NCBI GenBank assembly: GCA_950097015.1
Contig: CATNEN010000030.1
Coordinates: 1,426,001-1,490,000, forward strand
Length of the DNA stretch: 64,000 bases
Source of the DNA: Macrostomum hystrix
Lineage: Eukaryota; Animalia; Platyhelminthes
Direction of reading: 5' to 3'
The translations under genes and the position numbers were made by a program. How positions within the stretch are numbered: the stretch's first letter is position 1; each line of letters begins with the position of its first letter. The notes below the pieces were generated by a model. It searched no databases and had not been told where the DNA came from. It worked only from the letters and a program-made list of their open reading frames with translations. Positions 43,021 through 56,285 of the stretch are shown in pieces.

Positions 43021-43981
43021 CTTTGAAGGGGTGAGAATTGCTTGCTGAAAATGTAAACGTTAGATGAACAGGATGTATTCATAAATCATTATTTAGTTTA
43101 CTATGTCAACTATAGACTATTGCGCTCTTGCCCAGCTCACCCCTATAAGAAGTGGACTCAACTTTTCAGATTTGACTGAATTCGAGTTGCGAGCAATGTC
43201 TGTTGTTCTAGCTTTTCCTTAGCTTTAATTGTCTAGGCTCTTTAGTTCCAGGTATGTCTTCTTATTTTGCTTTTGCGTGTGTGTAAATACGGATTTGGTT
43301 GAAGAATGCGACTCATTTTCTATCGGTAATTTAAATATTGCATAGTTGTTGTTTTAGATTTCTCACTTTATATTCTTCCTCTTTACTTAGGTATTAGGTT
43401 TCCTGAGTCTTTTATTTTATTGGGCAAACTAGCGAGACCTTAAGTTAGCTGGCCGCATTTTCCCATAGTACACTGTGTTTCTTAATGTTTTCATTACTTA
43501 TTTTTAATACCTTCAGGTAAGGAATCTCGACCATAAAAAATCAAGGCAAAAAAGTTAAATTCTCCCTGTTTCCTTTTACTAATGCACTAAAGCACTAATG
43601 CTTGAAAAACTAAAACTAGGCCTACTAAATATACTACTGCTTTCTGTGAACACAGTAGACATATAAGCGAATGATCAGCGCTGTCTTTAATGTTGTTCTG
43701 TGTCAACTAGAATGATCCTTAAACAGACTCTAGATTTTCAATAAATGCGCAAAAAACTTTCATTATAAACCGTTCAGAATGCGTTTCGGTCTCTGTTACA
43801 TTTTTTGCTACCATTTTTTCTATTCGCTTTTTCTGGGTTTAGGAGACAAGACAGTATGGGCTCAGGTGTGTAAAATATAAATTAGAGACTATTCTAGATT
43901 CGGTGTGTGTGGTGTGTAAAGTGAATTGCAGACATCTGAAAGCTGATTTCTGACTATGCAAATATTTCATTTGTGTACCAG

Positions 43982-46013
43982 CGGCCAGTCCCAGTCAGCA
44001 TCAGCAGCGGCAGCGACTGCGCCACCGTGTCACTGCGCGCCTTCCTGGCCGGCCTGTCGGCTTGCCTGCCCGGCGCTCTGCTGGCCGCCCGCCTGTCGCC
44101 CTGGCCGTCTATTTCGGCCTGCGTCAATAGCGGCGTCGTTGGCTGCGACGCAGTCGACGACGCTCTGTGCTGGCTGCCGCCGGTCCTAGCCGGCTGCTGT
44201 CTGGGCACCCTGGCCTGTTTAGCACTGCTGCGCCTGATGCTACCCTGGGAAATTGGCCAGTGAGTCTTTGTCTGTCAGGTTCAGGCAGTTCGGGGCGCTA
44301 ACTATTGGGCTGGGATTTTTTTACAATGACAACCGCCATGTAGCCTAGTGCTTAGATCATCGGACTCACGATTTAACGGTTAGGGGTTCGATTCCTGACT
44401 AAAATGGAACAGTTTGTGTCCGTCAGCAAGACACTTAACTCTGCATTGCTTCAGTTCACCCAGCTGGTTAATGGGTGCCAGCATTAGCTGGGGTAATCTT
44501 GGGTTTGTGTGGCGTCCCCCCAGTCCATGGACTGAACAGCCGTACGCAGCCTTCAGATGCGCATATAAGCTATTATTATCGTATTTTTCTTGTTTGACGC
44601 TAATTTAGTCACAATCTTTCTACATATTTTATTGGGCATTCATTGGCCAAATGGTTAGAGAGACTTTTGCACCTAGAGATCGCAAGTTCGACGTCAGTTT
44701 AGAGCAAGACATTTCAGACATATTGAGTACTGAGTATGCTCGCTGTACTATTCCGCTGCAGCAGCGGCCGCTGTCCTGGCCGAGACCCGGCACATCTGGA
44801 GCACCTGCGACAGAGCGCCGCCTGCGCCTGCTTCCTCGGCTGCGTGTTCGGCACCGGCCTCGGCCTTGCCTCCATAGTTTTCTACAGGACCTGCCGCTGC
44901 TGGCCAGTCGGCCTGTACGCCTGCTACCTGAGCGGCTTTCATTGGTCGGAGTATTACGTAACAGCTGTGGCCAATCCGCCAGCTGCTCTGCGGCTTGGCA
45001 CCTACCTGTTGGATAACAGCACCGCTTATCGTGTGGCCGCTTTAATTAGCTGGCTGGAGTTCGGAGTCGAGTACTCTGTGGCGCCACATATGAAGGTGAG
45101 ATCCTCCATGAAATCAGCTTTTTCCAATCGAATCTCAATTGGATCTATTATTTGTATCCGATCTGTTCTTGCAATCTCCATGAGATCTATTGGAATCTCC
45201 ATGAGATCTATTCGAATCTCGATGAGATCTATTGGAATCTCCAAGAGATCTATTGGAATCTCCATGAGATCTTTTGGAATCTCCATGAGATCTTTTGGAA
45301 TCTCCATGAGATCTATTCGAATCTCGATGAGATCTATTGGAATCTCCAAGAGATCTATTGGAATCTCCATGAGATCTATTGGAATCTCCATGAGATCTTT
45401 TGGAATCTCCATGAGATCTATTGGAATCTCCATGAGATTTTTTTTATATCAATCTTCTTGTAAAGCTGCTCTGATAAATCTCTTTATTTATCGCTATTAG
45501 ATCTTAGTTAGTTGTCCCTCGACTTGCAACCGTCTCAGTGAGCTAAGCATTTCTATGAAACTTCGCAACCTTCAGGCCAGCCCGGCAGCGGTGGCTCTGG
45601 GCGCTGTCCTGTGCACAGCAGGCGAGGCCATTCGCAAACTGGCCATGCTGACAGCTGGTTCAAATTTCAATCATACAATCGAATGGCGCAAGCGCCCTGA
45701 GCATGCGCTAATTAGAAGCGGAGTCTACCGGCTGGCCAGGCACCCGGCCTACCTGGGCTGGTTTCTGTGGGCCTGCGGCACCCAGCTACTGCTGTGCAAT
45801 CCGCTCTCTCTGATTTGCTACGCTCTGGCTAGTTGGAATTTTTTCAATCGTCGAGTTAGAGAAGAGGAGCGACTGCTAGTGGCTTTCTTTGGCAAAGACT
45901 ATGTGGATTATAGACGGCTGGTCTGGTCAGGTGTACCATTTGTTAAAGGCTACGCCGACGCCGACAATGGATGGGAGGCTAAGGGCGATAGCCATTGCGA
46001 CTCGCTTATCTAA
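43982..46013 (+). CDS. ICMT: Isoprenylcysteine carboxyl methyltransferase; exons 43982-44259, 44762-45095, 45576-46013; start codon unresolved
   Basis: FHWSEYYVTAV, YLLDNSTAY, SWLEF, GEAIRKLAMLTAGSNFNH, GVYRLARHPAYLGWF and EEERLLVAFFG motifs. Exon 2 has a NAGNAG acceptor. Confidence 0.9.
44335..44565 (+). mobile_element. Full-length tRNA/CORE-type SINE, family A, in ICMT intron 1
   Basis: A box TAGCCTAGTG, B box GGTTCGATTCC, core GTGTCCGTCAGCAAGACACTTAACTCTGCATTGCTTCAGTTCACCCAGCTGGTTAATGGG. Near-identical copy at 52158. Confidence 0.8.
45165..45437. repeat. 21-bp minisatellite GAATCTCCATGAGATCTATTG in ICMT intron 2
   Basis: Seen directly. Confidence 0.95.
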
Positions 46014-48438: not shown

Positions 48439-48524
48439 CGCGTCGCTGCTGATCTTCTTCTGTGGCGCTGTGGGTGGCAACGATTTCGCTTTTTGGTATT
48501 TGGGGATGGTGACTACAAATATGA

Positions 48525-50297
48525 GAGTGGCGGCTGCAATCTGGGGATCTGGGAGAGTGACAGCTGCAATCTGGGGATCTGGGAGAGTGACAGCTGCAAT
48601 CTGGGGATCTGGGAGTGACAGCTGCAATCTGGGGATCTGGGAGAGTGACAGCTGCAATCTGGGGATCTGGGAGAGTGACAGCTGCAATCTGGGGATCTGG
48701 GAGTGACAGCTGCAATCTGGGGATCTGGGAGTGACAGCTGCAATCTGGGGATCTGGGAGTGACAGCTGCAATCTGGGGATCTGGGAGTGACAGCTGCAAT
48801 CTGGGGATCTGAGAGAGTGACAGCTGCAATCTGGGGATCTGGGAGAGTGACAGCTGCAATCTGGGGATCTGAGAGAGTGACAGCTGCAATCTGGGGATTT
48901 GGAGAGTGACAGCTGCAATCTGGGGATCTGGGAGTGACAGCTGCAATCTGGGGATCTGGGAGAGTGACAGCTGCAATCTGGGGATCTGAGAGAGTGACAG
49001 CTGCAATCTGGGGATCTGGGAGTGACAGCTGCAATCTGGGGATCTGGGAGAGTGACAGCTGAAATCTGGGGATCTGGGAGAGTGACAGCTGCAATCTGGG
49101 GATCTGGAGAGTGACAGCTGCAATCTGGGGATCTGGGAGAGTGACAGCTGCAATCTGGGGATCTGGGAGAGTGACAGCTGCAATCTGGGGATCTGGGAGT
49201 GACAGCTGCAATCTGGGGATCTGGGAGAGTGACAGCTGCAATCTGGGGATCTGGGAGAGTGACAGCTGCAATCTGGGGATCTGGGAGTGACAGCTGCAAT
49301 CTGGGGATCTGGGAGAGTGACAGCTGCAATCTGGGGATCTGGGAGTGACAGCTGCAATCTGGGGATCTGGGAGAGTGACAGCTGCAATCTGGGGATCTGG
49401 GAGAGTGACAGCTGCAATCTGGGGATCTGGGAGAGTGACAGCTGCAATCTGGGGATCTGGGAGAGTGACAGCTGCAATCTGGGGATCTGAGAGAGTGACA
49501 GCTGCAATCTGGGGATCTGGGAGAGTGACAGCTGCAATCTGGGGATCTGAGAGAGTGACAGCTGCAATCTGGGGATCTGGGAGAGTGACAGCTGCAATCT
49601 GGGGATCTGAGAGAGTGACAGCTGCAATCTGGGGATCTGGGAGAGTGACAGCTGCAATCTGGGGATCTGGGAGAGTGACAGCTGCAATCTGGGGATCTGA
49701 GAGAGTGACAGCTGCAATCTGGGGATCTGAGAGAGTGACAGCTGCAATCTGGGGATCTGGGAGAGTGACAGCTGCAATCTGGGGATCTGGGAGAGTGACA
49801 GCTGCAATCTGGGGATCTGGGAGAGTGACAGCTGCAATCTGGGGATCTGGGAGAGTGACAGCTGCAATCTGGGGATCTGAGAGAGTGACAGCTGCAATCT
49901 GGGGATCTGAGAGAGTGACAGCTGCAATCTGGGGATCTGAGAGAGTGACAGCTGCAATCTGGGGATCTGAGAGAGTGACAGCTGCAATCTGGGGATCTGG
50001 GAGAGTGACAGCTGCAATCTGGGGATCTGGGAGAGTGACGGCTGCAATCTGGGGATCTGGGAGAGTGACAGCTGCAATCTGGGGATCTGAGAGAGTGACA
50101 GCTGCAATCTGGGGATCTGGGAGTGACAGCTGCAATCTGGGGATCTGGGAGAGTGACAGCTGCAATCTGGGGATCTGGGAGAGTGACAGCTGCAATCTGG
50201 GGATTTGGGAGTGACAGCTGCAATCTGGGGATCTGGGAGTGACAGCTGCAATCTGGGGATCTGGGAGAGTGACAGCTGCAATCTGGGGATCTGGGAG
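48525..50297. repeat. 28/30-bp minisatellite GAGAGTGACAGCTGCAATCTGGGGATCTGG, about 60 copies, upstream of the RPSA ATG
   Basis: Seen directly. Confidence 0.97.
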
Positions 50298-50731
50298 AGC
50301 CAAAAAACAAGACCTAGCTAAACCACGACAGATTGCAAGTAATCAAGTCTATTACAGAAAAGAATATTTCATATATTTTAGGAAGTAAATCATTGTACAT
50401 GCAGCTTGAATCAGAAACAAACATGTTAATCACTGTGACCAATGGCAAGCAAATAGAATGACGATGAGCGCCTGAAACAGCAAGAGGTGAACGCAAGCAC
50501 TGACCGCCGAGTTCAATTATATTTTTAAGATAGATACAGTTAATAACATCTGGTACTTTTCTCTGTTTAAAAAGTCACCTAAGAACGTCAAAAAAGTTAA
50601 ATAATCGGTAACGGAAGAATCGTTTAAGAGTTTCAGAAGCGTTTTATTTCTACTGGCCAATAATCTCTAATAGTACATTTGGCAGGGTGATTTGAGGACA
50701 CTGGTGACTAGGAACAGCCCAGCGCCTGCGA

Positions 50732-51304
50732 CTAATCTGCAGACTCTAACTGGTAGTCCTCCACAACATGATATTCGGCAAAGGATGTCCAGAGTAGAAC
50801 AACAGCCGTGTACCACAGCAGCAGCTGCAGTAATCCGCCAGTCATCTTAGCGTAGTGGACATGCGGGGGCACGGCAAAGTCCGCGCGCATAATGTGCAAA
50901 TTTCTCGTATATAAAGCGGTACCAATAGTCATTGCCACTGCTGAATAAGCGAATAGGCACAGGCAAACCCACTGTTCGTGCTGGGGACACTGTATGCCGT
51001 GAGCTGTGAGTGCAGCAATGCTGCTCATCATGCCATTGCGAGTCCAAGACAGATAACTATTGTCATTTGATAGGCGATTCGCCACCCAACTAGCTTTGCG
51101 AGCTTCCATCTGCTGCTGCTGCTTCGTGTCCTGCTGATCGCTTTGCAATTTTTCGCGCCATTTTAAGCAGCCGCTACGACTGGTGCCGCGGCCAATTCGA
51201 CCGGTTGCTAAGCAACGGCGCAACCTTGGCAACAAGCTGGCCTTTTTAAAGCAAACGCAAGTCGCACGCCCGCTAGCAGGCAGCAGAATCGGGGAAATTA
51301 AAAG
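50732..51304 (-). CDS. TMEM160: TMEM160-like membrane protein; frame open from the acceptor at 51304, first in-frame ATG at 51109
   Basis: SYLSWTRNGMMSS matches the TMEM160 motif FLSWFRNGLLAS and is followed by three hydrophobic segments. Confidence 0.65.
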   Translation of the reverse strand, partial: LLISPILLPASGRATCVCFKKASLLPRLRRCLATGRIGRGTSRSGCLKWREKLQSDQQDTKQQQQMEARKASWVANRLSNDNSYLSWTRNGMMSSIAALTAHGIQCPQHEQWVCLCLFAYSAVAMTIGTALYTRNLHIMRADFAVPPHVHYAKMTGGLLQLLLWYTAVVLLWTSFAEYHVVEDYQLESAD

Positions 51305-51924
51305 CTGAAATTTTGAAAAAATCAAATTAATGTGTATCTATAAATTTTTATTCAGCTATCGACCAATTTTCATAATAGAAAATGAAAATGAAATTGAAAA
51401 CAAAATGATTGTGTGCAATAAATTTTCCTGCATTCATCTGATCAGAGCTATCAATCAGACAATAGATTGGTTTTCCGCTTTTTTAACAAATGAGATTAAT
51501 AAGAATAGCATAAAAAACTAGCTAGTGACACAGCAGCGAATGCAAAATTCCATCAATAAACTTACAAAATTATTGGAACATTGTCAAAGTGCATTTCACT
51601 CGAATAACAATATCATGACGGCGTCATAATATGCTAAAATAAAAAGCTGTTACAAGACTGTCTTATGAGGAAAAAGCAGCTGGACAGGATAAATACAGCA
51701 AAAATACACTAAACATGAAAATGAATACTGACAAGTATGACTAATAGGTCATCACTGGAGATTTTTTGTTGATACGCATTTGTAGGGTTCATGAAGCGGG
51801 CTATTCTACACGGTACAATTTGTGCAGGTAGGCTACATTACCACATGCTTATTTTCTACACTCTGAACTTAATTGCTGGCTGGATAAAACTAATTGTACA
51901 CAAGATGACGAATTGATGATAATT

Positions 51925-52135
51925 AACGGGAGATAACAGGTAGGTTATAATCACCTGGGAGATAACAGGTAGGTTATAATCACCTGGGAGATAACATGTA
52001 GGTTATAATCACCTGGGAGATAACATGTAGGTTATAATCACCTGGGAGATAACATGTAGGTTATAATAACCTGGGAGATAACAGGTACGTTATAAATACC
52101 AGGGAGATAACATGTAGATTATAATTACCTGTTAT
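51925..52135. repeat. 29-bp proto-unit array GGGAGATAACAGGTAGGTTATAATCACCT
   Basis: Seen directly; related to the 39-bp array. Confidence 0.85.
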
Positions 52136-52157
52136 CTGTTTGGGGGTTTTAAGAGGT

Positions 52158-52385
52158 TATAGCCTAGTGTTTAGGGCGTCGGACTCACGACTTGAAGGTC
52201 GGGGGTTCGATTCACGACTCCACTGAAACAATTTGTGTCCTTTAGCAAGACACTTAAATCTGCATTGCTTCAGTTCACTCAGCTGTTAAATGGGTACCAG
52301 CATTAGCTGGGATAATTGAAGGTAGGTGTGGCGTCCCCCCAGTCCATGGACTGAACAGCTGTACGCAGTCTTCAGATGCGCCACG
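52158..52385 (+). mobile_element. Full-length SINE family A inserted between the 29-bp and 39-bp arrays
   Basis: Matches 44335-44565 over the head, core and 3' part. Confidence 0.8.
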
Positions 52386-52387
52386 CA

Positions 52388-55300
52388 ATTTTTGTTAGCT
52401 GTTTGGGAGATAACAGGTAGGTTATAATTACCTGTTAGCCGTTTGGGAAATAACAGGTAGGTTATAATTTTTGTTAGCTGTTTGGGAGATAACAGGTAGG
52501 TTATATTTTTTGTCAGCTGTTTGGGAGATAACAGGCAGGTTATATTTTTGTCAGCTGTTTGGGAGATAACAGGTAGGTTATAATTACCTGTTAACCGTTT
52601 GGGAAATAACAGGTAGGTTATAATTTTTGTTAGCTGTTTGGGAGATAACAGGTAGGTTATAATTTTTGTTAGCTGTTTGGGAGATAACAGGTAGGTTATA
52701 TTTTTTGTCAGCTGTTTGGGAGATAACAGGTAGGTTATATTTTTGTCAGCTGTTTGGGAGATAACAGGTAGATTATTTTTTTGTCAGCTGTTTGGGAGAT
52801 AACAGGCAGGTTATAATTTTTGTTAGCTGTTTGGGAGATAACAGGTAGGTTACATTTTTGTCAGCTGTTTGGGAGATAACAGGCAGGTTATAATTTTTGT
52901 TAGCTGTTTGGGAGATAACAGGTAGGTTATAATTTTGTCAGCTGTTTGGGAGATAACAGATAGGTTATATTTTTGTTAGCTGTTTGGGAGATAACAGGTA
53001 GGTTATAATTTTTGTCAGCTGTTTGGGAGATAACAGGTAGGTTATAATTTTTGTTAGCTGTTTGGGAGATAACAGGTAGGTTATATTTTTGTCAGCTGTT
53101 TGGGAGATAACAGGTAGGTTATAATTTTTGTCAGCTGTTTGGGAGATAACAGGCAGGTTATAATTTTTGTTAGCTGTTTGGGAGATAACAGGTAGGTTAT
53201 AATTTTGTCAGCTGTTTGGGAGGTAACAGATAGGTTATATTTTTGTTAGCTGTTTGGGAGATAACAGGTAGGTTATAATTTTTGTCAGCTGTTTGGGAGA
53301 TAACAGGTAGGTTATAATTTTTGTCAGCTGTTTGGGAGATAACAGGTAGATTATATTTTTGTCAGCTGTTTGGGAGATAACAGGTAGGTTATAATTTTTG
53401 TCAGCTGTTTGGGAGATAACAGGCAGGTTATAATCTTTGTCAGCTGTTTGGGAGATAACAGGTAGGTTATAATTTTTGTCAGCTGTTTGGGAGATAACAG
53501 ATAGGTTATATTTTCGTTAGCTGTTTGGGAGATAACAGGTAGGTTATAATTTTTGTCAGCTGTTTGGGAGATAACAGGTAGATTATATTTTTGTTAGCTG
53601 TTTGGGAGATAACAGGTAGGTTATATTTTTGTCAGCTGTTTGGGAGATAACAGGTAGGTTATAATTTTTGTCAGCTGTTTGGGAGATAACAGGTAGATTA
53701 TATTTTTGTCAGCTGTTTGGGAGATAACAGGCAGGTTATAATTTTTGTTAGCTGTTTGGGAGATAACAGGTAGGTTATATTTTTGTCAGCTGTTTGGGAG
53801 ATAACAGGTAGATTATATTTTTGTCAGCTGTTTGGGAGATAACAGGTAGGTTATAATTTTTGTTAGCTGTTTGGGAGATAACAGGTAGGTTATATTTTTT
53901 GTCAGCTGTTTGGGAGATAACAGGCAGGTTATATTTTTGTCAGCTGTTTGGGAGATAACAGGTAGATTATTTTTTTGTCAGCTGTTTGGGAGATAACAGG
54001 CAGGTTATAATTTTTGTTAGCTGTTTGGGAGATAACAGGTAGGTTACATTTTTGTCAGCTGTTTGGGAGATAACAGGCAGGTTATAATTTTTGTTAGCTG
54101 TTTGGGAGATAACAGGTAGGTTATAATTTTGTCAGCTGTTTGGGAGATAACAGATAGGTTATATTTTTGTTAGCTGTTTGGGAGATAACAGGTAGGTTAT
54201 AATTTTTGTCAGCTGTTTGGGAGATAACAGGTAGGTTATAATTTTTGTTAGCTGTTTGGGAGATAACAGGTAGGTTATATTTTTGTCAGCTGTTTGGGAG
54301 ATAACAGGAAGTTATAATTTTTGTCAGCTGTTTGGGAGATAACAGGCAGGTTATAATTTTTGTTAGCTGTTTGGGAGATAACAGGTAGGTTATAATTTTG
54401 TCAGCTGTTTGGGAGGTAACAGATAGGTTATATTTTTGTTAGCTGTTTGGGAGATAACAGGTAGGTTATAATTTTTGTCAGCTGTTTGGGAGATAACAGG
54501 TAGGTTATAATTTTTGTCAGCTGTTTGGGAGATAACAGGTAGATTATATTTTTGTCAGCTGTTTGGGAGATAACAGGCAGGTTATAATTTTTGTTAGCTG
54601 TTTGGGAGATAACAGGTAGGTTACATTTTTGTCAGCTGTTTGGGAGATAACAGGCAGGTTATAATTTTTGTTAGCTGTTTGGGAGATAACAGGTAGGTTA
54701 TAATTTTGTCAGCTGTTTGGGAGATAACAGATAGGTTATATTTTTGTTAGCTGTTTGGGAGATAACAGGTAGGTTATAATTTTTGTCAGCTGTTTGGGAG
54801 ATAACAGGTAGGTTATAATTTTTGTTAGCTGTTTGGGAGATAACAGGTAGGTTATATTTTTGTCAGCTGTTTGGGAGATAACAGGTAGGTTATAATTTTT
54901 GTCAGCTGTTTGGGAGATAACAGGTAGATTATATTTTTGTCAGCTGTTTGGGAGATAACAGGCAGGTTATAATTTTTGTTAGCTGTTTGGGAGATAACAG
55001 GTAGGTTATATTTTTGTCAGCTGTTTGGGAGATAACAGGTAGATTATATTTTTGTCAGCTGTTTGGGAGATAACAGGTAGGTTATAATTTTTGTCAGCTG
55101 TTTGGGAGATAACAGATAGGTTATATTTTCGTTAGCTGTTTGGGAGATAACAGGTAGGTTATAATTTTTGTCAGCTGTTTGGGAGATAACAGGTAGATTA
55201 TATTTTTGTCAGCTGTTTGGGAGATAACAGGCAGGTTATAATTTTTGTTAGCTGTTTGGGAGATAACAGGTAGGTTATATTTTTGTCAGCTGTTTGGGAG

Positions 55301-56285
55301 ATAACAGGCAGGTTATAATTTTTGTTAGCTGTTTGGGAGATAACAGGTAGGTTATATTTTTGTCAGCTGTTTGGGAGATAACAGGCAGGTTATAATTTTT
55401 GTTAGCTGTTTGGGAGATAACAGGTAGGTTATAATTTTTGTCAGCTGTTTGGGAGATAACAGATAGGTTATATTTTTGTTAGCTGTTTGGGAGATAACAG
55501 GTAGGTTATAATTTTTGTCAGCTGTTTGGGAGATAACAGGCAGGTTATAATTTTTGTTAGCTGTTTGGGAGATAACAGGTAGGTTATATTTTTGTTAGCT
55601 GTTTGGGAGATAACAGATAGGTTATCATTTTTGTCAGCTGTTTGGGAGATAACAGGTAGGTTATATTTTTGTCAGCTGTTTGGGAGATAACAGGTAGGTT
55701 ATAATTTTTGTCAGCTGTTTGGGAGATAACAGGTAGGTTATATTTTTGTCAGCTGTTTGGGAGATAACAGGTAGGTTATAATTTTTGTCAGCTGTTTGGG
55801 AGATAACAGGTAGGTTATAATTTTTGTCAGCTGTTTGGGAGATAACAGGTAGGTTATAATTTTTGTCAGCTGTTTGGGAGATAACAGGCAGGTTATAATT
55901 TTTGTTAGCTGTTTGGGAGATAACAGGTAGGTTATAATTTTTGTTAGCTGTTTGGGAGATAACAGGCAGGTTATAATTTTTGTCAGCTGTTTGGGAGATA
56001 ACAGGTAGGTTATAATTTTTGTCAGCTGTTTGGGAGATAACAGGTAGGTTATAATTTTTGTTAGCTGTTTGGGAGATAACAGGTAGGTTATAATTTTTGT
56101 CAGCTGTTTGGGAGATAACAGGTAGGTTATAATTTTTGTCAGCTGTTTGGGAGATAACAGGTAGGTTATAATTTTTGTTAGCTGTTTGGGAGATAACAGG
56201 TAGGTTATAATTTTTGTCAGCTGTTTGGGAGATAACAGGTAGGTTATAATTTTTGTCAGCTGTTTGGGAGACAACAGGTAGGTAG
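52388..56285. repeat. 38/39-bp minisatellite (GT[C/T]AGCTGTTTGGGAGATAACAGGTAGGTTATAATTTTT), about 100 copies, 3.9 kb
   Basis: Seen directly. Confidence 0.98.

What the first reader, a model, noticed from the sequence alone, without database searches (positions are those of the whole stretch)
50732..51310. TMEM160-like gene has an ATG-less presequence-like extension that starts in frame at a splice acceptor: candidate spliced-leader AUG start
Seen: on the minus strand the acceptor aaaatttcag| is followed in phase 0 by 65 open codons before the first in-frame ATG (LLISPILLPASGRATCVCFKKASLLPRLRRCLATGRIGRGTSRSGCLKW...). This stretch is rich in Arg/Ser/Leu and has no acidic residues over about 50 aa, like a mitochondrial presequence. 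Known: TMEM160 is mitochondrial with an N-terminal presequence, and flatworm spliced leaders end in AUG, which can act as the initiator Met in schistosomes. Inference: trans-splicing supplies the start and hence the targeting peptide. Alternative: start at the out-of-frame AAAATGG (51161) with a +1 error in an A5 run.
Basis: partly seen in the sequence, partly recalled or inferred. Interest (0 to 1): 0.72.

Follow-up and report, generated by a model that had tools for sequence, protein, structure and literature searches.

The report
TMEM160 start codon from spliced leader

Summary
On the minus strand the acceptor tttcag| (51305) is followed from 51304 by 190 open codons. The first in-frame ATG is codon 66. 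An in-frame TAG at 51340-51338 closes the frame upstream with no ATG in between.

In two runs (one study), a 729-nt contig covers 50599-51305 and carries 22 non-genomic letters at 51305. With the G at 51305 these letters spell GCGAAGACTCAATTTATTGCATG, the last 23 nt of the published M. lignano spliced leader. The mRNA therefore reads ...AUG|CUU UUA..., in phase 0. The contigs show no indel, so the "+1 error in the A5 run" alternative is refuted.

The product is a TMEM160 orthologue:
- It is 68% identical to an M. lignano protein carrying PF27853.
- The downstream neighbour, RPSA, is the same in both species.

No in-frame ATG is conserved among the three Macrostomum copies, and one copy has none before the conserved core. 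The extension stays open, basic and acid-free in both species, and a CLATGR motif is conserved.

Translation from the leader AUG and mitochondrial targeting remain inferred. The mechanism has been known since 2006 in schistosomes and was called likely for Macrostomum in 2023. This scan has already found it at other genes of this genome. It is a new member of a known kind, of low to moderate interest.

The parts
51305..51314 (-). Trans-splice acceptor aaaatttcag. Its last six bases TTTCAG fit the [T/C]TNCAG motif reported for M. lignano SL acceptors.
   Evidence: Sequence. The motif is from PMC8629364. The leader is joined here in contigs of runs X4 and X5.
51110..51304 (-). ATG-less N-terminal extension, codons 1-65 of the genomic ORF. 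It is basic, Ser/Leu/Cys-rich, and has no acidic residue up to residue 51.
   Evidence: It is covered without an indel by the SL-bearing contig.
51197..51214 (-). Codons 31-36, CLATGR. This is the only well conserved motif of the extension. It lies upstream of every in-frame genomic ATG of the window.
   Evidence: Invariant in the window, P0001 and P0002. At the DNA level the block differs by one synonymous change, TTA versus CTA.
51090..51161 (-). Out-of-frame ATG in a strong context (AAAATGG) with a 23-codon ORF and its stop. It overlaps the in-frame Met66 codon, so a ribosome that skipped the leader AUG would meet this ATG first.
51107..51109 (-). First in-frame genomic ATG (Met66, MEARKASW). 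The matching residue is Ala in both M. lignano proteins.
50735..51106 (-). Conserved TMEM160 core (EARKASWVANRLSNDNSYLSWTRNG... to the C-terminus), with hydrophobic segments around residues 112-134 and 154-177.
   Evidence: 99 of 125 residues are identical to M. lignano, and changes are concentrated at third codon positions (0.19/0.09/0.56). P0001 carries PF27853. ESM Atlas features match TMEM160.
50732..50734 (-). Stop codon TAG.
50643..50648 (-). AATAAA in the 3' UTR. Contigs nevertheless run on to about 50350.
51338..51340 (-). In-frame TAG in the outron. It closes the frame 12 codons upstream of the acceptor, with no ATG in between.
   Evidence: Read.

Best explanation
This is the single-exon TMEM160 orthologue of a Macrostomum flatworm. 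Its pre-mRNA is trans-spliced at the acceptor TTTCAG| (51305/51304) to the genus-wide spliced leader, which ends in AUG. The leader's AUG lands in phase 0, giving AUG CUU UUA AUU..., and so becomes codon 1 of a 191-residue protein. That protein is Met, then a 65-residue basic, acid-free extension, then the conserved TMEM160 membrane core.

Shown: the leader-exon junction in RNA assemblies, the phase, the absence of any indel, and the absence of an in-frame genomic ATG upstream of codon 66.

Inferred: ribosomes start at the leader AUG. It is the first AUG of the mRNA. The next AUG is out of frame in a strong context and overlaps Met66.

Inferred with less confidence (about 0.6): the extension is the mitochondrial targeting peptide that brings TMEM160 to the inner membrane.
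For: -: in runs X4 and X5 a 729-nt contig lies on 50599-51305. It has 0 gaps and 0 or 1 other letter, and carries a 22-letter loose end at 51305. Reverse-complemented and joined to the g at 51305, this reads GCGAAGACTCAATTTATTGCATG. That is identical to the last 23 nt of the M. lignano SL, CGGTCTCTTACTGCGAAGACTCAATTTATTGCATG (PMC8629364).
- the exon begins CTT at 51304, in frame with the ORF.
- an in-frame TAG lies 12 codons upstream with no ATG between.
- in-frame Met positions differ in all three Macrostomum copies. The window has M66, P0001 has M27, and P0002 has none before residue 81 inside the conserved core. All three ORFs open at the homologous nucleotide, and CLATGR sits at codons 31-36 in all.
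- the junction-to-core distance differs by 33 nt (11 codons), so the phase is kept.
- 'open and acid-free' arises in only 0.9% (window) and 0.4% (M. lignano) of shuffles.
- TMEM160 clusters in the ESM Atlas have representatives of 187-202 aa. This matches 191 aa from the leader AUG, against 125 aa from Met66.
- flatworm leaders end in AUG, and more than 40 S. mansoni cDNAs need it as the start (Cheng et al. 2006, as cited there).
- the M. cliftonense/M. hystrix genome paper calls the leader's final ATG a likely translation start.
- human TMEM160 is an inner mitochondrial membrane protein.
Against: - No translation data exist (no Ribo-seq, no N-terminal peptide).
- The leader AUG has a weak context (U at -3, C at +4) and lies about 32 nt from the cap, so leaky scanning is possible.
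- The first 30 codons are saturated with change at all three codon positions against M. lignano (0.67/0.63/0.63). There is therefore no codon-position signature of coding. Only frame, length, openness and composition are kept.
- The RNA evidence is from contigs of two runs of a single study that are not on record as RNA. Contigs cannot show isoform proportions and drop rare variants.
- No targeting predictor was available. The very N-terminus (MLLISPILLPASG) is hydrophobic and uncharged, and could also be read as signal-peptide-like. The hydrophobic-moment result was not informative.
- In the M. lignano assembly the base pair before the homologous start is TG, not AG. Conservation of the trans-splice site itself is therefore unproven.
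Confidence: 0.8

Rival explanations
1. The extension is an untranslated 5' leader, and the protein starts at the internal Met66 (51109). This would give a 125-residue TMEM160 core without a presequence.
For: - Met66 sits directly before the conserved core.
- The leader AUG has a weak Kozak context.
- The first 30 codons show no codon-position bias in their divergence.
- 65 open codons arise in 6% of shuffles.
Against: - The leader AUG is the first AUG and is in frame with no stop.
- A ribosome that skips it meets the strong-context, out-of-frame AAAAUGG at 51161, whose ORF overlaps Met66.
- Met66 is Ala in both M. lignano proteins, and P0002 has no Met before the core at all.
- CLATGR is conserved upstream of it, with a synonymous change.
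- Acid-free, basic composition is kept in two species.
- Family members are about 190 aa long.
Confidence: 0.12
2. The extension is translated from the leader AUG, but it is not a mitochondrial presequence. It could be a signal peptide or anchor, or a tolerated junk extension.
For: - MLLISPILLPASG is hydrophobic and uncharged, and ends in a small-residue A-S-G motif.
- The extension is unusually Cys-rich in both species.
- No amphipathic helix was clearly found.
Against: - The M. lignano N-terminus is not hydrophobic, yet is equally basic, Ser-rich and acid-free.
- Human TMEM160 is in the mitochondrial inner membrane.
- Net charge is +10 and +8 over the first 50 residues, with no acidic residue up to 51 or 56.
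Confidence: 0.15
3. An assembly error (+1 in the A5 run 51149-51153) hides the true start at ATG 51161.
For: AAAATGG is a good Kozak context, and a homopolymer lies 8 nt downstream.
Against: - Independent contigs in two runs match the window with no inserted or missing letter over 50599-51305 (table 4).
- The M. lignano frame runs uninterrupted through the homologous region, and it has no ATG at the homologous place.
- CLATGR upstream of 51161 is conserved in the main frame.
Confidence: 0.01
4. The main mRNA is cis-spliced at 51304 from an upstream exon that carries an ATG. The SL-joined form would then be a minor by-product.
For: Contigs of the same runs also cover 51352/51413-51957 upstream of the acceptor, at depths of 13-18. 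That region is therefore transcribed.
Against: - No joint to any upstream place was reported.
- The only sequence found joined at 51305 is the leader, in both runs (tables 5 and 7).
- The M. lignano gene models also start at the homologous nucleotide and are annotated as 5' partial.
Confidence: 0.03

Closest known systems
[quoted passage not shown] 2023)
   Same: The leader ends in AUG. It is joined at a canonical acceptor in phase 0 with a conserved ORF that has no suitable ATG of its own.
   Different: This is a free-living macrostomorph, not a parasite. Translation from the leader AUG is not demonstrated here. The donated AUG opens a 65-residue, presequence-like extension rather than just replacing Met1.
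Macrostomum SL trans-splicing (Wasik 2015; Wudarski 2017; Ustyantsev and Berezikov 2021; Wiberg et al. 2023)
   Same: The last 23 nt of the leader are identical to the 35-nt M. lignano SL. The acceptor TTTCAG fits [T/C]TNCAG. Wiberg et al. state that the final ATG is likely a translation start.
   Different: In the text I could read, those papers do not document individual genes that depend on the leader AUG. This is a specific, RNA-supported case.
TMEM160 (Pfam PF27853; human inner mitochondrial membrane protein)
   Same: The protein is 68% identical to an M. lignano protein carrying PF27853. ESM Atlas features match at 0.94, with 221 of 256 features shared with TMEM160 clusters. The length is about 190 aa with hydrophobic segments.
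   Different: The Pfam copy available here lacks PF27853, so the window's own protein gave only a sub-threshold DUF202 hit. Localisation in flatworms is untested.
Alternative trans-splicing for dual targeting of isoleucyl-tRNA synthetase in Trypanosoma brucei (PMC3273800)
   Same: The trans-splice site decides whether a mitochondrial presequence is part of the translated mRNA.
   Different: In the trypanosome the AUGs are genomic, and two acceptors give two isoforms. Here the AUG itself comes from the leader, and only one acceptor was seen.

Membership tests
SL-donated initiator AUG (flatworm slORF) | The mRNA is trans-spliced to the spliced leader at the 5' end of the ORF. | tested here: met
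   contigs of X4 and X5 carry 22 non-genomic letters at 51305 that match the M. lignano SL.
SL-donated initiator AUG (flatworm slORF) | The leader ends in AUG, and that AUG is in frame with the ORF with no stop between. | tested here: met
   The junction reads ...TTGCATG|CTTTTA. CTT is codon 1 of the 190-codon open frame.
SL-donated initiator AUG (flatworm slORF) | No genomic in-frame ATG can give the full conserved protein. | tested here: met
   An in-frame TAG lies at 51340-51338 and no ATG occurs before codon 66. CLATGR is conserved upstream of it. The Met is not conserved in P0001 or P0002.
SL-donated initiator AUG (flatworm slORF) | Ribosomes actually initiate at the leader AUG. | not testable with these tools
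   This needs Ribo-seq, N-terminal proteomics or a reporter.
TMEM160 (PF27853) | Significant match to the family profile. | tested here: inconclusive
   The local Pfam copy gave only DUF202 at E=0.0078, below the cut-off. The 68%-identical orthologue P0001 carries a precomputed PF27853 hit. ESM Atlas top clusters are TMEM160.
TMEM160 (PF27853) | Orthology by gene order. | tested here: met
   TMEM160 is followed about 2.2 kb downstream, on the same strand, by RPSA in both the window and M. lignano.
TMEM160 (PF27853) | Inner mitochondrial membrane localisation. | not testable with these tools
   Known for the human protein only (PMC9714381).
Mitochondrial matrix-targeting presequence | N-terminal, net positive, lacking acidic residues, rich in Arg/Ser/Leu. 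| tested here: met
   Net charge is +10 (window) and +8 (M. lignano) over 50 residues, with no Asp/Glu. The shuffle probabilities are 0.009 and 0.004.
Mitochondrial matrix-targeting presequence | Amphipathic helix and an MPP cleavage motif. | tested here: inconclusive
   The hydrophobic-moment peak falls in a Gly-rich stretch that is unlikely to be helical. No cleavage-site predictor was available.
Mitochondrial matrix-targeting presequence | Drives import into mitochondria. | not testable with these tools
   This needs a fusion-protein localisation or import assay.

The most novel reading that the evidence does not exclude
In Macrostomum, dependence on the leader's AUG may be concentrated in genes for mitochondrial presequence proteins. 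Presequences accept almost any basic, acid-free sequence and are removed after import. Once the leader AUG is in phase, a gene could therefore lose its own ATG without cost and recruit former 5' UTR as targeting peptide. Trans-splicing would then be obligatory for importing a whole class of proteins, and the presequence could turn over completely, as seen here between two species. The scan's notes on this genome list many such candidates: TOP3A, a neurolysin-like peptidase, mt-TyrRS, D2HGDH, MRM2, TFAM-like, CDK5RAP1, RCC1L and PIF1.
Probability: 0.25. Interest if true: 0.55.

Novelty: new member of a known kind. Interest (0 to 1): 0.3.

Why it matters
For annotation, gene finders that demand a genomic ATG will truncate this gene to Met66 or call it "partial", as happened to all three M. 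lignano copies in GenBank. They would lose the probable targeting peptide. Macrostomum gene models should therefore be built with the leader's ATG prepended at mapped trans-splice sites.

For biology, this is a clean case in which a protein's probable organelle address exists only after trans-splicing. It also adds to a growing list of mitochondrial genes in this genome that behave the same way, and that pattern could be tested genome-wide. The mechanism itself is not new.

Tried and rejected
- **Frameshift alternative.** An A5 error putting ATG 51161 in frame is rejected, because there is no indel in the contigs of two runs.
- **Rfam scan of the window.** No family reached its threshold.
- **Spliced-leader gene.** No SL gene copy lies in the window (0 matches with up to 3 mismatches).
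- **Pfam scan of the window's protein.** It gave only a sub-threshold DUF202 hit. The local library appears to lack PF27853, so family identity rests on the orthologue and on the ESM Atlas.
- **Word-based protein search.** It found only the M. lignano cluster. No other flatworm TMEM160 was available to compare N-termini.
- **M. lignano acceptor.** All three loci read TTCCTG|CTT, with no AG at the annotated start. The nearest AG is 15 nt upstream and is also in phase. This could not be resolved without reads.
- **Codon-position divergence.** It gave no coding signal in the first 30 codons, where change is saturated.
- **Hydrophobic-moment scan.** It was uninformative.
- **Cheng et al. 2006.** The paper is not held in the library and is cited only through papers that summarise it.
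- **tRNA-like stretch at 52150-52380.** ARAGORN found no tRNA.

Full report
**The observation.** I read 50400-51700 on the minus strand. The sequence aaaatttcag|CTTTTAATTTCC places the AG at 51306-51305 and the first exon base at 51304. From there the frame is open for 190 codons, to TAG at 50734-50732. The first in-frame ATG is codon 66 (51109-51107, MEARKASW). Upstream of the acceptor the same frame is closed by TAG at 51340-51338, with no ATG in between. An unspliced transcript therefore has no in-frame start either. The out-of-frame AAAATGG (ATG at 51161-51159) opens only 23 codons, and the A5 run is at 51153-51149. Every sequence statement of the finding is correct.

**What the gene is.** The local Pfam copy gave only a sub-threshold DUF202 hit. 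The word-based protein search found one cluster, Macrostomum lignano BOX15_Mlig022501g1 (P0001, 181 aa, "partial"). It is 68% identical and carries a precomputed PF27853 TMEM160 hit. ESM Atlas feature search put three TMEM160 clusters first, scoring 0.94-0.92 with representatives of 187-202 aa. In M. lignano the gene is followed about 2.3 kb downstream, on the same strand, by RPSA (Ribosomal_S2/40S_SA_C). The window has the same arrangement, with RPSA coding from about 48440 downward. This is therefore the TMEM160 orthologue of a Macrostomum species other than M. lignano. [quoted passage not shown]

**The decisive test.** The single run search found four runs of one study that hold the stretch, plus three low-share runs. 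I laid X4, X5, X1 and X3 on 50330-51920, kept short and clear of the flanking tandem arrays. In both X4 and X5 a 729-nt contig lies on 50599-51305 with no gaps and 0 or 1 other letter. It continues beyond 51305 with 22 letters that are not in the genome: ATGCAATAAATTGAGTCTTCGC on the plus strand. Reverse-complemented and joined to the g at 51305, this is GCGAAGACTCAATTTATTGCATG. That is exactly the last 23 nt of the published 35-nt M. lignano spliced leader, CGGTCTCTTACTGCGAAGACTCAATTTATTGCATG (PMC8629364).

The mature mRNA thus reads ...UUGCAUG|CUU UUA AUU UCC..., with the leader's AUG in phase 0 with the ORF. The acceptor TTTCAG fits the [T/C]TNCAG motif reported for M. lignano trans-splice sites. 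No joint to another genomic place was reported, and no contig bridges 51306-51351. These runs are not on record as RNA. However, the leader joint, the missing outron junction and their small total contig size (39-47 Mb) show that they are RNA.

**Is the extension coding?** There are no translation data, so this is inference. It rests on five points.

- The leader AUG is the first AUG of the mRNA, and no stop follows it. The next AUG is the out-of-frame AAAAUGG in a strong context, and its 23-codon ORF overlaps Met66. Leaky scanning would therefore not deliver ribosomes to Met66 efficiently.
- M. lignano has three loci encoding two protein variants (P0001 at L001 and L002, P0002 at L003). Aligned with the window, the in-frame Met positions before the core are M66 (window), M27 (P0001) and none (P0002). 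The first Met of P0002 is residue 81, inside the conserved RNGM. Where the window has Met66, both M. lignano proteins have Ala.
- All three ORFs open at the homologous nucleotide (CTT...). CLATGR occupies codons 31-36 in all, with a synonymous TTA/CTA difference. The junction-to-core distance differs by 33 nt, a whole number of codons.
- The first 30 codons are saturated with change at all three codon positions (0.67/0.63/0.63), unlike the core (0.19/0.09/0.56). Sequence is therefore not conserved there. Even so, both species keep an open, basic, acid-free stretch. Net charge is +10 and +8 over 50 residues, and the first acidic residue is at 52 and 57. "Open and acid-free" arises in 0.9% and 0.4% of shuffles respectively. 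This pattern of conserved composition, length and frame with free sequence is what a targeting presequence shows.
- From the leader AUG the protein is 191 aa, the family's usual size. From Met66 it would be 125 aa.

**Caveats.**
- The leader AUG has U at -3 and C at +4.
- The extreme N-terminus of the window's protein is hydrophobic and uncharged, so a signal-peptide reading cannot be excluded without a predictor.
- The hydrophobic-moment scan was uninformative.
- Contigs cannot give isoform proportions.
- In the M. lignano assembly the two bases before the annotated start are TG, not AG, at all three loci. The nearest AG is 15 nt upstream, separated from the start by five open, in-frame codons.
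- The M. lignano annotation pipeline cuts genes at mapped trans-splice peaks and also uses 5'-end data (PMC5730564). The annotated start could therefore be a TG acceptor, a slightly misplaced junction or a transcription start. Either candidate junction keeps the leader AUG in phase, but conservation of the trans-splice site is not shown.

**Comparison with what is known.** All reported flatworm spliced leaders end in AUG (PMC12582326). Cheng et al. 2006 reported that it is in frame in 28% of S. mansoni trans-spliced transcripts and that more than 40 cDNAs need it as the start (as summarised in PMC9851317). [quoted passage not shown] This scan has already noted the same pattern at other genes of this genome. 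Follow-up agents reached the same verdict for TOP3A, a neurolysin-like peptidase, D2HGDH and others. Those are unchecked AI notes, used here only as leads. The finding is therefore real, well supported at the RNA level, and a new member of a known kind.

**What might be new.** Many of the ATG-less genes noted in this genome encode proteins that are mitochondrial elsewhere. This may be reader bias. It may also reflect a real tendency, since presequences tolerate sequence turnover and are removed after import, so a gene with an in-phase leader AUG could lose its own ATG neutrally. A literature search for a link between spliced leaders, AUG and mitochondrial targeting returned only trypanosome and dinoflagellate work. 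One example is alternative trans-splicing for dual targeting of T. brucei IleRS (PMC3273800), and no flatworm study turned up. I rate this reading at about 0.25.

Noticed in passing
window 51352-51957 (minus-strand outron side): Contigs of the same RNA runs cover 51352 (X4) or 51413 (X5) up to 51957, at depths of 13-18, against 19-37 for the mRNA. Nothing bridges 51306-51351. An AATAAA lies on the minus strand at 51352-51347, 45 nt upstream of the acceptor. This could be the 3' end of an upstream cistron (an operon), a stable outron, or another transcript.
   Followed up: partly
L001:2981-3001, L002:2981-3001, L003:1481-1501: All three M. lignano TMEM160 loci read TTCCTG|CTT at the annotated 5'-partial CDS start, which is homologous to the window's TTTCAG|CTT. 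There is no AG at that position. The nearest AG is 15 nt upstream and in phase. The start CTTTCC also resembles a TCT/TOP-type initiator.
   Followed up: partly
window 48523-50299 and L001:4735-5696: A 30-bp tandem array fills the spacer between TMEM160 and RPSA in both species. The window has 60 copies and M. lignano about 32, and the units are roughly 60-65% alike. A positionally conserved satellite in a possible repeat-filled operon spacer fits the report that repeats inflate intergenic distances in M. lignano operons (PMC8629364).
   Followed up: partly
window 52387-56283 and 51928-52131: A 3.9-kb array of a 39-bp unit (about 101 copies) lies here, with a related 29-bp array of 7 copies nearby. 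On the minus strand the unit contains both an acceptor-like CCCAAACAG and a donor-like CAGGTAAT. In M. lignano a different 26-bp array abuts the gene's 5' end (L001:2556-2986).
   Followed up: no
window 52150-52380: A stretch with tRNA-like T-arm and acceptor motifs (gaatcgaacccccgacc... on the minus strand) lies here. It may be a tRNA-derived SINE fragment. ARAGORN found no tRNA.
   Followed up: partly
window 50487-50628: Two allelic contig versions of the 3' UTR are present in both runs. They differ by 4 substitutions and a TT insertion behind 50561. Transcripts continue past the AATAAA at 50648 to about 50350.
   Followed up: no
window 51109-51110: Run X1 (labelled as another organism, 95-99% alike) has an extra CAG (Gln) in the poly-Q run just before Met66. 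This is an in-frame length variant.
   Followed up: no
window 43960-44259: A first-stage note on this window says that ICMT also lacks a genomic ATG and opens in phase 0 at an acceptor. It would be a non-mitochondrial case of the same habit.
   Followed up: no
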